A stretch of DNA of 64,000 nt from Bugula neritina (GCA_964035545.1 OZ037765.1:29635504-29699503), one strand, 5' to 3'; numbered from the stretch's first letter, positions 20,887 through 26,347 are shown. A program made the numbers and translations. Notes: generated by a model from the letters alone, not told the origin.

Positions 20887-23800
20887 ATGGCAAGTAACAT
20901 GATAAACTTACGGACAAGTAGCAAACCTAACTCACCTCTTCACAATGTTAAAAGTAAGCAAGAAGCACAGCTATTGGTTGAATCTGTTGACCCTGGTTTT
21001 CGTAAATACTTATTGCAATCTATAGATGAGGAGGGAAGCTCAGCTTTACACAAAGCAGTGACTGAGGGCAATCTAGAAGTAGTGAAGTATCTGTGTGAGG
21101 CTGCTGGTAAATATGATTCAGATTTAATAACTCAAGTTGACCGTTATGGCCGGTCGCCATTGTTTTATGTTAGTGAAGAGTATATAGCAAGGCTGTTGGT
21201 AGATTCATTATCTCCAGAAAAGCAGCAGTCTCTGTTATTATCTCGAACTTTGTGTAAAGAAACTGTACTGCATGAGGCATCTGCTAAGGGAAACACGTCA
21301 TTAGTTGCTTACTATTGTAGCATTGTTTTGAAACTTGAAGAGTTTGTTTTCAGCAGAGATAGATTTGCTAGAACACCTCTTCATTTAGCATCAAACGGAT
21401 CAACTGCAAAGGAGCTAATTAGGTCAGTCCAACACATACTTAAGGAAAAGGATATTTTTTTGGCCCTTGATTGTAATCTCTCGACACCACTGCATCGAGC
21501 AGCAGAATATGGCCGAGCTGAAGTCGTAGAGTGTCTTTGCAGAATATCGCTTTCTGAGGATCAACTAACACACATTGACAAGTTTGGTAGAACACCATTG
21601 CATTATGCCAAAACAAAAGATATTGCTCATATAATTGTAAATTCATTGAAAAAATCTTATCAACGAAGTTACATAATGATTTGTGACAATGAAGGTCAAA
21701 CAGCTCTGCATTCAGCAACAATGTGGGGAGGTGGCAAAAAAGTAGCTTTGTACACACAATCAGAGGGTAGTAGAGCTGATGTATTAGAGTATTTATGTAA
21801 GTTGATAGGGCCAGATTTGGTAACGGTGAAGGACAATTATGGCCGCACAGCATTACACTATGCAGACTCCTATCAGAATGCACAACTATTGATAGATTAT
21901 TCCGGAAGTTCTCCCTTGGAATATATTTCAACCCGGGATGACAGTGGTAGTAACGCTTTAGCTTATTTGGTGCTTCAGTTTTCTCCAGAAGATTTGTCGG
22001 ATATGTTAGACTATATGGAGTTAGAATTTGGCTGTGACACTCTCCGAAAGCTTGCATTTACTTCTCTCAACACAGACAAGCAGAGTCTTTTTCACCTAGC
22101 TCCTATCTCCTTTAGACATACCAATGAGCTCTGTTCTATAGTTCTAGAGCGACTTCCTCCAGACTTTTACAATCTCATGACAGCGGATTCTGAAGGATAT
22201 ACTCCACTAGATTACATGGTATTCGGAACTTTATTAAATCCTTTCGCTCAGACTATGATAAGCCTGCCATTGGCTCATAGGCAAATGTGCTTCACTCACA
22301 GGAATCTCCTAGCTTACGATAGGAGAATAGCTAAAGAATCTACAGAAGAAAACAAAGAAGAGGTTTTTGATGTAGATGTTATTTGGAAAATGAAGAACCA
22401 CTCGGCTATATTTCAGTTGAATCAAATACACGAAGACATATTTAAAATTGTTAAATATGCTTTAAATGAGTATTCACTTTTAGATTCTGCTTATATTTTA
22501 TCTTTAAAATTGTCTTCGGAGTATACACTAAATTTGATGTCACGGCTGTTGCAATTACCAGGAAATCCCTCTCCAGTAAATGTTATAAAACAGGTATCTG
22601 TATATAATGATTTGATGTAGTATGTAAAATATCAAATCTGTTAATGTTTTTTGCATCTTTTGCTTTCTGTATGTCTATTTTTCTGACTCATCTATGTTAA
22701 AGAAAAAACAAGAGAGTGATTCTGTGTCCATTTTGTGGTACTACATAAACTTTTATGAGCTCCAGAGAAAGTTTAGTATATCGGATGTTCAAAGCCAACT
22801 GAGTCTATGTGAAAAACCTGAATATCATGGTGTGCCAAAGGTATGACGATTTTGAGGTGTTCTATAATAGCCTAACCTAACCTGGACTGGAAAATAATTT
22901 TGAATTATATTATATTGGTATTATCTAATTGCTCACCTGCACTTAGCCTGTAAAATTACAAATATATAGATAACTTTTAGGATATTCTGAAATCTTTAGC
23001 CACCTGCATAGTATCAATTTCCAGTATACATATTAATCACCTAACTTGTATATAGCCACCTCTGTATCAGCTTCAATAGTAAAGGATACCTTTTCTGAAT
23101 TTGAGTTTAGGGTCTTTGAGTTGTAAATCAATAATATATATATTTAGCAATGCTCGTGACTCCTAGGTGACCCCCTAGAGTCACTTGAGCACTCTGGCTT
23201 GGGTTTACACACCTTTTAAATATGCTTTAGTAAAACTATAAGTTTCTACTATTAATGCGAAGGTGTGGGCTATGGTACTCTGTTCTGTGCTGATGAGGGG
23301 ACAAATCCCGAAACAGCTGCTGTCCACAGATTGAGATATATATATATATATATATATATATATATATATATATATATATATATATATATATATATATATA
23401 TATATATATATATATATATATATATATATATATATATATATTCTGTAAATAGTGTAACCAATCTTTCTTCTTTAACTGCTTAAACTAGGATTATGAAATT
23501 TTTTTATCAATGATCATTAAGACAAAGTTGGCCAAAATATTTAATATAACTTTTATAACAGCATTGGAGTTTGTAGTACTATACATGTTTTAATGCATTG
23601 CTAATTAAATAATTCTTAGTAATTTTATAAAAATGTAAAAAAGCTTTGCACTTAATTTTTGCTCAGAAATCAAATTTTAGATGCTGGACTTTATTGTAAA
23701 GCTGCAAACGTATCACATCTGACTTTTACAAAAATAAAAATTGTAGATTTTAAACAGGCAAAGATTTTTGTTAATAATATATGATTTATCAATAGTATAT

Positions 23801-26347
23801 AAGGATCTATTCTCTGGCTGTAGGTGGTTGTTGTTAGAACACTGGATTCAAAGACACAATTGGTGCCTCCTGGGCCAGAATATGTTCTTCTGACAAGTTT
23901 TTATACATCCAGTTCATTACTTCAAAGGTCAGCGCTGTTGAAATATCGTTTTGAATAACGCTTTCTGTGATCTAAACATTTTCAGATTTAAAACAGTGGT
24001 TTAAATACGTATCATGAAATAAACATAAAATGGCTAAGTTATAAAATTTTAGAGATATAATACTTTCTTAATCATTAAGCAAGTATATAATGGTATATTC
24101 GTTAAATACTTTAGCATTTAAACATGTATGTAATGTTAGCCCAACTCACCAAGTTCACCAAGTTTCCAGCTGTTCACATGTGCATTCGATTCACAGCTAT
24201 CACAAAGCTCCATCTCTACCAAAAGCTATGATGTCATAACTCCGAACATAACCGAGCCATAATCCTACATGCATGTTAATGTTTGCATATAAACAGCTGT
24301 GAAAACTATGAAATTCCTTCAATTTTAGATAAATTAAAATGTGACCAAGTTTAATTAAGCAAATTCAAACAATATTTTAGAAACTTCGAACTCTAGAGCT
24401 TAAATAGTGATATTTGTTCATGTTTTCTTTAGCAGTCAATGTTCCGAGGTAGAATTGAGCAAGTTTCCAGTGAAACCTTTAATAGACAAGCTTCTAACCA
24501 CTGAGAATGCTGACCACGTAGCAGTAAACAGCACCATGAGTGCCAGGTACTTGATGGAAGATGGTCAAACTGATTGGAAGGTCAAAGTTGAAGTAACAGG
24601 AGATAACAGAGGAAGAGCTCTCATTATCTGCAATAGAACTAACCGGGAGCACAAGTTGGAGAAAGAATTGAAAAGTGCACGAATATTTCTTCAGGACAAG
24701 CTGGGTTTAAAAGTAATGTCGTTATAATATCTCATTATAGGGTTCTCAATATTATATTAAAACTTTGTTTTTCGAAGAGGTGTAATCTTCAAATAAAATT
24801 TCCTTCAATAGATAAACAGTTATAATATTGATAATCAAAGATTTAACATAGAGATAGTATAATATCTATCTGCATGCTGTTACATGTACTAGTTGAAGGT
24901 TCAAAGCCATTGAACTTCCTTTTAAATTAGCATAATATTCTGTTATATGATGAATCGTCAGAATAGAACATGCAGCTGTATAAACACATTATTTTCTGCT
25001 GATTGAACTCAAGTTAACATCTGATTTATACAGGTTGAGATAAAGTTTGATCAAACAGCTCTTGGCATTGTAGCCTGCGTTACTGAGTTCTCACGCCTTC
25101 AGGAACATGGCTGTATGCTGGCCCTTGCCATCATGTCTCATGGTGAAAATGGTGAGATTGTTGGTGACGATGGCATAGATAAGTGCCCTGTGCAAAGTAT
25201 TGTTGATGCTCTTTGCATCCCATCACTGAAAAATGTACCAAAGGTGAAAACATATTGCTATAATAAGCGGTTTATGAACATTCATTTTCTATTTTCGAAT
25301 AATAGTTATTTTAAATATTTTCAAACTTTATGTTTGATTATTTCGATCACATTACCAGATGTAAATATTTTGTGCGTTTCAAGACATCTCTAATGCATTT
25401 TTGTTCAATTCAATTAATATTATTATCACAAATTTATTTCTATGGTGGTTATTTGCAGCTGCTGCTGCTGTCATTCTGCAGAGGAAGGATTGGTCACGTC
25501 AACCGGCAGATCTCATCTTGGCAGTGTGAAATTCTCCCGGAGCTCACTGGAAGCTTTCCAAAAATGGAGCCATTGCAGGATGACGTGAAAACTTTTGAAT
25601 GGAGTAGGAATCCCTTTCCGTACACAGAAGTACCTGAAAACTGCTACATATGCTTTTCAACTCTACCTGATAGCAAGTAAGTCATCCATTACATTCTGCG
25701 ATATAATCATGTTCCATAAATTTCACGACAATTGCTGTGATCTGAAAGACATATCTAAAATATGGATGCAAGTATTTGAAACAAAGTTGATAATAGCTAC
25801 CACCAGGAAAGCTCTATATATGACATAAAAAAAAAATCGCAGCAGCATATAGCTCAGGGTACTAATGTTTATCATTACCCCATTAAGTACTTGTAACATA
25901 GCATACTAAAACCTTATGCATTGCAATGCCTGCGTAAGCTACATGCTATAATTATAATGCTTACAATAAAGTGTTATATAATGCTTAGCAAAATGCTTTT
26001 ATAATACTTATATAATAAAATGTTCTATACTTTTGACAATAAGTTAAAAGAACTCAGAATTTAATAGAACCCTCCAAAGCTATCATATAAATAAATACAT
26101 TTGCCTACATCTTTAAATATCTATTTGTATTTTCAGGTCTTCCCGGGGAGCCATGTTTCAAGCATTTTTAGATTACTCTACTGAGCTGAATCAGTATGCA
26201 AGCGGCTCAACAAAAGTAGAACTGATTGACTTAATCACTCAAGTCGCTGCTCTTACTAAAGAAAACTCTCACTATACGCAGTTTCTCAATTGTTGTTACA
26301 AAATGACCAAAAATACAAAAGCTGTGGTGATTAAAATACTGCCTTAA
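20887..26347 (+). CDS. Ankyrin-repeat-caspase (peptidase C14) fusion protein, about 909 aa. Exons 20887-22593, 23824-23927, 24433-24712, 25034-25243, 25459-25676, 26137-26347
   Basis: Exons sum to 2730 nt, all GT-AG, intron phases 0/2/0/0/2 compatible. About 10-12 ankyrin repeats ([16 protein letters not shown]). Caspase motifs [16 protein letters not shown] (catalytic His), PK|LLLLSFCRG (catalytic Cys), and p10-like [19 protein letters not shown]...ELIDLITQV. Confidence 0.8.
23144..23335 (+). mobile_element. Penelope-like/retrozyme-type repeat fragment carrying a hammerhead, abutting (TA)n
   Basis: About 160-190 bp clearly homologous to 59264-59426 (TTTAAATATGCTTTAG...GAAGGTGTGGGCYATGGTAC...GTGCTGATGAGGGGACAAATCCC). 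Family assignment is inferred from the minimal hammerhead. Confidence 0.7.
23284..23330 (+). ncRNA. Type I hammerhead ribozyme (minimal, Penelope-type); predicted cleavage after C23324 (GUC)
   Basis: Stem I TCTGTG (23284-23289) / CACAGA (23325-23330); core CTGATGA (23290-23296); stem II GGGG-acaaa-TCCC; GAAA (23310-23313); stem III CAG-ctg-CTG; then UC. Confidence 0.85.
23336..23440. repeat. (TA)n microsatellite
   Basis: Directly visible. Confidence 0.99.

What the first reader, a model, noticed from the sequence alone, without database searches (positions are those of the whole stretch)
20887..26347. Ankyrin-repeat-caspase fusion: a caspase whose prodomain is an ankyrin solenoid instead of CARD/DED
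Seen: the 1.7-kb ankyrin exon splices in frame through a 104-nt linker exon into four exons encoding a full p20+p10 caspase. I see no death-fold domain. Known: initiator caspases normally use CARD or DED prodomains and are activated by induced proximity. Inference: this may be a single-chain sensor-protease, in which the ankyrin array binds a ligand (or autoinhibits) and controls caspase dimerisation, i.e. a lineage-specific innate-immune or cell-death module. I cannot tell from here how novel the architecture is.
Basis: partly seen in the sequence, partly recalled or inferred. Interest (0 to 1): 0.88.

Follow-up and report, generated by a model that had tools for sequence, protein, structure and literature searches.

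The report
Ankyrin-prodomain caspase gene in Bugula
This is most likely one seven-exon gene of a Bugula bryozoan that joins about twelve ankyrin repeats to a divergent but catalytically intact caspase. The layout was named "ANK caspase" in flatworms in 2024, and here it is one of about twenty copies.

Summary
The ankyrin exon and the four caspase exons are real and stay in frame. A further 138-nt coding exon (22703-22840) lies between the ankyrin exon and the 104-nt exon. In RNA, exon A starts at 24436, not 24433.

Spliced RNA contigs from the sister lineage (Bugula neritina) prove exon 2 > 104-nt exon > A > B. No read was obtained across the ankyrin junction itself. The fusion is therefore inferred (about 0.8) from four things:
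- 20 of 21 homologues of the p20 exon in this genome sit just downstream of a homologous ankyrin exon.
- A donor site is present at the end of every ankyrin exon examined.
- The only possible separate start codon is out of frame in B. neritina.
- A public AUGUSTUS model makes a similar join, through other splice sites.

The protease is closest to CED-3 and caspase-2. It keeps His and Cys but reads SFCRG instead of QACxG. No death-fold domain was found.

The architecture is not new: ANK caspases are published for parasitic flatworms and one annelid, although bryozoans were not sampled. This scan has already flagged the same Bugula family on other windows. The sensor-protease idea remains untested.

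The parts
20887..22593 (+). Coding exon 1 (569 codons, ends in phase 0). It holds about 12 ankyrin repeats (aa 15-470) and then a roughly 100-aa tail predicted with low confidence.
   Evidence: ORF. Pfam Ank_2 4.7e-39. AF2 pLDDT about 90 for aa 15-470 and below 50 for 472-569. Foldseek finds ankyrin-R/B repeat arrays. dN/dS 0.42 against B. neritina, with no indels. An in-frame stop lies just upstream of ATG 20887.
22453..22485 (+). Family-invariant motif [11 protein letters not shown] (aa 523-533) in the tail of exon 1.
   Evidence: Invariant in 11 of 11 family tails aligned and in 7 of 7 full exons. Function unknown.
22594..22702 (+). Inferred intron 1 (109 nt): donor CAG|GTATCT, pyrimidine tract, acceptor AAG|. 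Read through, it gives the stop at 22618-22620.
   Evidence: Sequence. It is less conserved than the exons (89.5%) and carries 14 gap columns against B. neritina. Every paralogue ankyrin exon examined has a GT, mostly GTAAGT-like, shortly before its stop. Splicing here was not shown by RNA.
22703..22840 (+). It ends ...KPEYHGVPK.
   Evidence: The X2 RNA contig continues 185 nt upstream of the 104-nt exon, and the 30 letters shown match window 22811-22838. The X1 contig ends at 22766. dN/dS 0.12 with no indels. Homologous exons occur in paralogues L034, L036 and L038.
23016..23441 (.). A 426-bp insertion in intron 2: a dispersed repeat unit plus a (TA)n tract. It is not part of the gene product.
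   Evidence: Absent from both B. neritina contigs. At least 60 copies at 93-97% identity elsewhere in the genome. No Rfam match.
23824..23927 (+). Coding exon 3 (104 nt), with the conserved PPGPEY motif.
   Evidence: Spliced RNA contigs from X1 and X2. Homologues in five paralogues. dN/dS 0.34.
24436..24712 (+). Coding exon 4 (A): conserved pre-protease segment and the start of p20 (RGRALIICN). Starting at 24433 is also possible (tandem acceptor).
   Evidence: Joints 23927>24436 and 24712>25034, both GT..AG, in RNA contigs. B. neritina has lost the proximal AG. 37% identical to paralogue L036.
25034..25243 (+). Coding exon 5 (B): core of p20, with the catalytic His of AIMSHG at 25139-25141.
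   Evidence: RNA contig. The exon-B family profile hits CED-3 at 4.4e-11 and caspase-2 at 5.4e-11. His is invariant in 15 of 15 sequences.
25459..25676 (+). Coding exon 6 (C): catalytic Cys of SFCRG at 25477-25479, the intersubunit linker and the start of p10.
   Evidence: C-R-G is invariant in 7 of 7 family members. 97% identical to B. neritina, dN/dS 0.13. No RNA contig was laid here.
26137..26347 (+). Coding exon 7 (D): p10 (SSRGAMF...) and the stop codon.
   Evidence: Homologous in all paralogues examined. dN/dS 0.23. The X1 contig 26075-26361 covers it but is not spliced.

Best explanation
This is one protein-coding gene of a bryozoan of the Bugula neritina complex, with 7 coding exons and 954 codons. 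It encodes an ANK-prodomain caspase made of four parts:
- an N-terminal solenoid of about 12 ankyrin repeats;
- a flexible tail with an invariant [11 protein letters not shown] motif;
- about 125 conserved residues from exon 2, exon 3 and the first half of exon A;
- a divergent CED-3/caspase-2-like protease domain that keeps the His-Cys dyad (SHG, SFCRG).

It is one of about 20 genes of the same build in this genome.

Shown here: the domains, the reading frame, purifying selection, transcription and splicing of exons 2 to 5 in the sister lineage, and the family-wide linkage.

Inferred: the ankyrin exon is spliced to exon 2. By analogy with CARD/DED prodomains, the ankyrin array then serves as the recruitment or ligand-binding module that brings protease domains together, or releases them, for activation. 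This would be a death-fold-independent way of controlling a caspase.
For: Domains:
- Ankyrin exon.
- The paralogue L036 p20 exon scores 34.8 bits on Peptidase_C14 (cut-off 21.4) and hits caspase-2 at 1e-5.
- The exon-B family profile, which includes the window's exon, hits CED-3 and caspase-2 at about 5e-11.
- His and Cys are invariant.

One gene:
- 20 of 21 exon-B homologues lie 1.7-6.8 kb downstream, on the same strand, of an ankyrin-exon homologue, across chromosomes C1, C2, C3, C4, C6, C8 and C9.
- The exon order e2, link, A, B, C, D recurs in the five paralogues read in full, though e2 was not found in two of them.
- All paralogue ankyrin exons examined have a GT, mostly GTAAGT-like, a few to about 50 codons before their stop.
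- Exons 2 and 3 are conserved coding sequence without a conserved Met. The ATG at 22694 is out of frame in B. neritina because of a 1-nt indel. Only 73 nt separate the read-through stop from that ATG.
- Indels occur only in the introns, apart from two 1-nt indels in the draft that RNA and another contig do not share. dN/dS is 0.42 for the ankyrin exon and 0.18 for the other exons.
- The public model KAF6022059.1 (AUGUSTUS with transcript hints, PMC7576161) joins the ankyrin exon to exon 2, exon 3 and exon A. The X1 RNA contig ends exactly at that model's acceptor, 22766.

RNA: spliced contigs cover e2>link>A>B. They belong to the B. neritina lineage at 33 of 37 variant sites.
Against: - No read or contig was seen across 22593>22703 or 22362>22766. 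The single read-laying run had to avoid the (TA)n repeat.
- There is no RNA evidence for exon C or for the C>D junction.
- The RNA comes from the sister lineage, not from this assembly's own individual.
- The window's caspase exons fail Pfam one by one.
- The active-site pentapeptide is SFCRG, not QACxG. The residue aligned with the S1 Arg of p20 appears to be Lys here (read against the alignment). The p10 Arg is not conserved among paralogues. Asp specificity, and even activity, are therefore uncertain.
- Two database searches for spliced fragments found nothing.
Confidence: 0.8

Rival explanations
1. Two adjacent genes. An ankyrin-only protein of 577 aa ends at the stop at 22618-22620. A separate caspase-like gene starts at ATG 22694 in exon 2.
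For: - No junction read across intron 1.
- In this window, ATG 22694 is in frame with exon 2.
- Database ORFs P0001 and P0122 end at the read-through stop.
Against: - P0001 and P0122 are simple ORF calls on unspliced contigs.
- The ATG is out of frame in B. neritina.
- 73 nt is too short for a 3' end plus a promoter.
- The donor and the pyrimidine-tract acceptor are conserved.
- Ankyrin and caspase exons are linked in 20 of 21 cases on seven chromosomes.
- Exon 2 is conserved upstream of any Met.
- The AUGUSTUS model joins them.
Confidence: 0.1
2. The fusion gene is real, but the protease module is a non-canonical or inactive caspase-like domain. It would be a regulator or decoy in the manner of cFLIP, or a protease with non-Asp specificity, rather than a working Asp-specific caspase.
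For: - SFCRG replaces QACxG.
- The position aligned with the S1 Arg of p20 is Lys in the window, and the p10 Arg is Ala in four paralogues.
- The window's exons are below the Pfam cut-off.
Against: - His, Cys and the following Arg-Gly are invariant across the family.
- Purifying selection is strong on exons A to D (dN/dS 0.12-0.23).
- Decoys usually lose the Cys.
Confidence: 0.2
3. Both forms are made. Retention of intron 1 gives an ankyrin-only isoform. A second splice (22362>22766) gives a fusion isoform that lacks the invariant motif.
For: - KAF6022059.1 uses donor 22362 and acceptor 22766.
- The X1 contig ends exactly at 22766, as expected at a branch between two upstream sequences.
- An unspliced contig, L023, exists in a public run.
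Against: - The donor GAG|GTTTTT is weak.
- The skipped part holds the most conserved motif of the family.
- L023 may simply be genomic DNA.
Confidence: 0.3

Closest known systems
ANK caspases of parasitic flatworms and Alitta virens (Horkan et al. 2024, Genome Biol Evol, PMC11463336; first noted in Schistosoma, cited there as Lee et al. 2014)
   Same: An ankyrin-repeat pro-domain stands in place of CARD or DED in front of a caspase domain. The function is unknown, and the authors propose an initiator role.
   Different: - The phylum differs: that study sampled no bryozoans, and it called the type unique to parasitic platyhelminths plus one annelid.
- Here it is a family of about 20 genes, not one gene per species.
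- The protease scores best against CED-3 and caspase-2 (45 bits) and poorly against caspase-8 (22 bits). The flatworm clade is reported to sit near the DED caspases.
- I could not fetch flatworm sequences, so common or separate origin was not tested.
Caspase-2 / CED-3 (CARD initiator caspases)
   Same: They are the best sequence matches of the p20 region. The nearest annotated full-length protein is a barnacle CARD-containing caspase-2-like protein, P0133. The SHG His and the catalytic Cys are shared.
   Different: - There is no CARD; ankyrin repeats take its place.
- The pentapeptide is SFCRG instead of QACRG.
- About 125 extra conserved residues lie between the prodomain and p20.
- The S1 pocket residues are altered.
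Paralogous Bugula ankyrin-caspase genes (this genome, for example G000:C1:62453-66982 = L036, and the C8 7.33-7.58 Mb cluster)
   Same: They share the exon order, the invariant [11 protein letters not shown] motif, the PEYxGxPK and PPGP[ED]Y motifs, and the xxCRG active site.
   Different: - Only 28-50% identical.
- This copy has one of the shorter arrays (569-codon exon, against open frames of up to 3025 aa) and lies alone on C1 at 29.66 Mb, outside the clusters.
- L036 has lost the A|B intron.
Ankyrin-R/B membrane-binding domain (for example PDB 5Y4F, 4RLV)
   Same: Best structural matches of the exon-1 model. A 12-repeat solenoid superposes on AnkB R13-24 (TM by target 0.67). Those arrays bind extended peptides, including their own autoinhibitory segments.
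   Different: Only 17-19% identical. This is a fold resemblance only, and no binding was tested.

Membership tests
Caspase (peptidase family C14A) | Sequence homology of the p20 region to caspases | tested here: met
   The exon-B family profile, with the window's exon as first row, hits CED-3 at 4.4e-11 and caspase-2 at 5.4e-11. The paralogue L036 p20 exon scores 34.8 bits on Pfam PF00656 against a cut-off of 21.4. The window's single exons alone are below the cut-off. The joined protein was not scanned.
Caspase (peptidase family C14A) | Catalytic His in the SHG motif | tested here: met
   AIMSHG in exon B, codon 25139-25141. Invariant in 15 of 15 family sequences.
Caspase (peptidase family C14A) | Catalytic Cys | tested here: met
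   The Cys of SFCRG is at 25477-25479. C-R-G is invariant in 7 of 7.
Caspase (peptidase family C14A) | Canonical QACxG pentapeptide | tested here: not met
   It reads SFCRG here and in L036, and SCCRG or CCCRG in the other paralogues.
Caspase (peptidase family C14A) | Asp-binding S1 pocket (two Arg and the Gln of QACxG) | tested here: inconclusive
   The Gln is replaced by Ser. The p20 position aligned with the caspase-2 Arg is Arg in L036 but appears to be Lys in the window (alignment read). The p10 SSR Arg is present here but is Ala in four paralogues.
Caspase (peptidase family C14A) | p10 subunit completing the fold | tested here: inconclusive
   Exons C and D are conserved in the family, and the CY[VI]C[FY][ST]TLPDS and SxRGxxF motifs resemble the caspase p10 start. 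The exon-C profile finds no solved structure. The protease domain was not folded because its exons could not be joined.
Caspase (peptidase family C14A) | Proteolytic activity | not testable with these tools
   Needs recombinant enzyme.
ANK caspase (Horkan et al. 2024) | Ankyrin repeats N-terminal to the caspase domain | tested here: met
   for the repeats. The order on the + strand follows.
ANK caspase (Horkan et al. 2024) | Both parts in one polypeptide | tested here: inconclusive
   Strong indirect support, but no RNA read across intron 1.
ANK caspase (Horkan et al. 2024) | Membership of the flatworm ANK-caspase clade | not tested
   No flatworm sequence could be fetched. The best matches are CED-3 and caspase-2, not caspase-8, which hints at a separate origin.
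CARD/DED initiator caspases | Death-fold prodomain | tested here: not met
   Pfam finds no CARD, DED or Death domain in exon 1, exon 2 or exon 3 at E up to 1-10. The AF2 model of exon 1 is an ankyrin solenoid followed by low-confidence helices. The tail model was too poor (pLDDT 58) for a fold search.

The most novel reading that the evidence does not exclude
The Bugula ANK caspases may have arisen independently of the flatworm ones, from a CED-3/caspase-2-like ancestor that swapped its CARD for ankyrin repeats. They then diversified into about 20 or more one-chain sensor-proteases. In these, a variable ankyrin groove would recognise non-self or damage ligands, or hold the invariant [11 protein letters not shown] tail as an autoinhibitory segment, and would trigger proteolysis without any death-fold adaptor. 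That would amount to an innate-immune or allorecognition repertoire of a colonial animal.
Probability: 0.2. Interest if true: 0.8.

Novelty: new member of a known kind. Interest (0 to 1): 0.45.

Why it matters
Caspase activation is usually explained through death-fold adaptors (CARD, DED). ANK caspases are a recently named exception, and no function is known for them yet.

A third phylum carrying about twenty intact and transcribed copies, under purifying selection, would show that the design is not a quirk of parasitic flatworms. It would also offer a free-living, culturable colonial animal in which to test how an ankyrin array controls a caspase.

On the practical side, the public B. neritina record (KAF6022059.1, "hypothetical protein") is truncated by an assembly indel and hides the caspase part.

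Tried and rejected
- **Searches for spliced transcript fragments.** I queried the protein collection with exon A and with the ankyrin tail. Both found nothing, which under the length filter says little.
- **HMMER scan of 1.84 billion representatives with the paralogue p20 exon.** It gave only 14 hits: 13 of 78-147 aa and one barnacle caspase-2-like protein. No annotated full-length ANK caspase was found.
- **Fetching the remaining 13 paralogue loci.** Exon-level comparison therefore rests on six loci and the ortholog.
- **AF2 of the exon-1 tail alone.** It gave pLDDT 58, too poor for a fold search, so the absence of a death fold rests on Pfam and on the low-confidence model.
- **Exon-C profile against the PDB.** No meaningful hit.
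- **Rfam over 20000-27500.**
- **Joined-protein analyses, left out as instructed.** There is therefore no whole-protein Pfam score, no database search with the joined protein and no fold of this gene's own protease domain.
- **Operon or trans-splicing reading of the short gap.** I considered it but did not pursue it, because I know of no spliced-leader trans-splicing in bryozoans (own knowledge).
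Full report
**What the window is**

The window is G000:C1:29635504-29699503 of a 216-Mb, AT-rich animal genome. The 90%-identity cluster of the ankyrin ORF contains KAF6022059.1, "hypothetical protein EB796_019634 [Bugula neritina]". The B. neritina draft contig (L024) is about 95% identical to the window over the exons. The window therefore comes from a bryozoan of the B. neritina complex. It is a sister lineage of the public draft, not the same one.

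**Checking the observation**

The open frame 20887-22593 (569 codons) is a strong ankyrin-repeat match (Ank_2 E 4.7e-39). An in-frame stop lies directly upstream of ATG 20887.

Downstream there are exons with caspase landmarks: RGRALIICN (A), AIMSHG (B), SFCRG (C) and SSRGAMF (D).

Coordinate arithmetic gives these exons: 20887-22593, 22703-22840, 23824-23927, 24436-24712, 25034-25243, 25459-25676 and 26137-26344, plus the stop. That is 2862 nt, or 954 codons, with all phases compatible.

Everything below is exon by exon.

**RNA evidence**

Three public runs hold parts of the stretch.

Contigs of two runs, X1 and X2, are spliced with GT..AG introns. They are labelled only as probable RNA, but the splicing shows it. 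The joints are 23927>24436 (508 nt skipped) and 24712>25034.

The X2 contig continues 185 nt upstream of the 104-nt exon. The 30 letters displayed match window 22811-22838, with two differences.

His 24433 acceptor is the proximal AG of a tandem acceptor. The RNA uses the distal AG, and B. neritina has lost the proximal one (TTTGG).

The RNA contigs carry the B. neritina allele at 33 of 37 variant sites, so they show expression of the ortholog. Nothing was laid on exon C. The contig over exon D (26075-26361) is unspliced.

**Is the ankyrin exon part of the same gene?**

No read across intron 1 was obtained. Two database searches for spliced fragments were blank. The indirect evidence is nevertheless consistent.

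1. In this genome, 21 places match exon B. Twenty of them, all those with E of 6e-8 or better, lie 1.7-6.8 kb downstream and on the same strand of a match to the ankyrin exon. They are spread over seven chromosomes.
2. In the five paralogues I could read in full, the order ankyrin exon, exon-2-like (...PEYxGxPK; not found in L035 and L037), exon-3-like (PPGP[ED]Y), A, B, C, D recurs.
3. Every paralogue ankyrin exon examined has a GT, mostly GTAAGT-like, in phase 0. It follows an invariant [11 protein letters not shown] motif and lies a few to about 50 codons before the stop. That is what an internal exon looks like when read into its intron.
4. Intron 1 would be 109 nt, with a long pyrimidine tract and an AG acceptor.
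5. The only candidate start for a separate caspase gene is ATG 22694, which lies 73 nt after the read-through stop. B. neritina has a 1-nt indel between that ATG and the exon, which puts the ATG out of frame. Exons 2 and 3 have no Met, yet they are conserved coding sequence (dN/dS 0.12 and 0.34, no indels).
6. The public AUGUSTUS model, made with transcript hints (PMC7576161), joins the ankyrin exon to exon 2, exon 3 and exon A. It uses an internal donor (22362) and an internal acceptor (22766). The X1 RNA contig ends exactly at 22766, as a de Bruijn contig would at a point where two upstream sequences meet. This suggests alternative splicing there.

I put the fusion at about 0.8.

**The public model is truncated**

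KAF6022059.1 stops inside exon A because the draft has an extra G there. It also has a missing base in exon B. Another contig of the same lineage (L023) lacks the extra G, and the RNA contigs show no gaps at either place. These are therefore assembly errors. The caspase part is simply unannotated in the public record.

**What the protease is**

Taken alone, the window's exons do not reach the Pfam cut-off.
- The paralogue L036, in which A and B are one exon, scores 34.8 bits on Peptidase_C14 (cut-off 21.4). It hits caspase-2, caspase-1, CED-3 and caspase-4 in the PDB.
- A profile of 15 exon-B sequences, with the window's exon first, hits CED-3 (4.4e-11) and caspase-2 (5.4e-11). Caspase-8 reaches only 1e-3.
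- In a scan of 1.84 billion representatives, the only full-length annotated relative is a barnacle CARD-containing caspase-2-like protein.
- His (SHG) is invariant in 15 of 15 sequences, and Cys-Arg-Gly in 7 of 7.
- The pentapeptide is SFCRG or SCCRG, not QACxG. The Arg residues of the S1 pocket are not uniformly kept.

It is a divergent caspase with an intact dyad, under purifying selection (pooled dN/dS 0.18). Its specificity is uncertain.

**What the prodomain is**

AlphaFold on exon 1 gives a confident helix-turn-helix solenoid for aa 15-470 (pLDDT about 90), with one loop at 282-294. There are nine clear TxLH-type repeat starts and three degenerate ones. The model matches the ankyrin-R/B repeat arrays.

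Residues 472-569, which include the invariant motif, are predicted with low confidence. Pfam finds no CARD, DED or Death domain in exons 1-3.

**How it probably works**

This part is inference. The ankyrin array replaces the death-fold prodomain as the module that recruits or holds the zymogen. Activation would then come about in one of two ways. Partner-induced proximity could bring protease domains together. Alternatively, an intramolecular hold could be released.

The ankyrin-B arrays that the model resembles bind their own extended autoinhibitory segments. The conserved, probably flexible tail is a candidate for such a segment. The higher dN/dS of the ankyrin exon (0.42) and the family expansion fit a recognition role, but they do not prove one.

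**Comparison with what is known**

[quoted passage not shown] They are described in all parasitic flatworms sampled and in the annelid Alitta virens. The authors call the type otherwise unique to platyhelminths. Their 60 genomes include no bryozoan (Horkan et al. 2024, PMC11463336).

This scan's earlier notes on other windows of the same genome describe the same Bugula family, and they pointed me to that paper. I checked the paper myself.

The architecture is therefore known but uncharacterised. This gene is a new member in a new phylum and one of about 20 copies. Whether its origin is separate from the flatworm clade was not tested. The CED-3/caspase-2 affinity hints that it is.

**Verdict**

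The gene is real and most likely a fusion. The exon model has been corrected. The architecture has already been named elsewhere, and the function is untested.

Noticed in passing
window 23016-23441: A 426-bp insertion in intron 2 that is absent from both B. neritina contigs. Its 190-bp core (about 23142-23335) has at least 60 scored copies (709 candidates) at 93-97% identity across the genome, some in tandem with a 271-bp period. A (TA)n tract follows it.
   Followed up: partly
L024 (B. neritina GCA_010799875.2, VXIV02002909.1), positions aligned to window 24462 and 25096: Two 1-nt indels in exons A and B of the public draft are not seen in RNA contigs or in another contig of the same lineage. 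They truncate the public model KAF6022059.1 to 574 aa and leave the caspase exons unannotated.
   Followed up: yes
window 22362/22363 and 22765/22766: Possible alternative splice used by the public AUGUSTUS model. It would skip 98 codons, including the invariant [11 protein letters not shown] motif. The X1 RNA contig ends exactly at 22766.
   Followed up: partly
window 24431-24435: Tandem acceptor TAG-CAG. RNA of the sister lineage uses the distal AG, and that lineage has mutated the proximal one to GG.
   Followed up: yes
L036 (G000:C1:60000-69999) 3660-3860, 5604-6080, 6641-6850: In this paralogue, intron 1 consists of about six tandem copies of its own donor-site region. The intron between A and B is lost. 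Exon D carries a PSPGVPEY repeat insertion.
   Followed up: no
G000:C2:30508951-30549374; also C9:9319905-9322967, C7:5539349-5543326, C2:32918381-32921795: Ankyrin exons are also followed on the same strand by more canonical Peptidase_C14 matches, including four units with a period of about 12 kb. This is a second ankyrin-caspase subfamily. The genome has at least 177 Peptidase_C14 matches, which is a lower bound.
   Followed up: no
window 141-482, 2175-2489, 7492-7842 (- strand): ORFs with a GPPGRDGRDG collagen-like stretch and a conserved Cys-containing C-terminal domain. They look like short-chain-collagen-like genes, in two copies.
   Followed up: no
window 31359-32114 (-) and 62258-63346 (-): A KLF-like zinc-finger exon and an Sp-like Gln/Ser/Thr-rich exon. 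The B. neritina contig also has a C2H2 gene at the corresponding place downstream of the caspase gene.
   Followed up: no
window 52465-53036: A minisatellite that reads as a long open frame (HISTHTLYL repeated). It is probably not coding.
   Followed up: no
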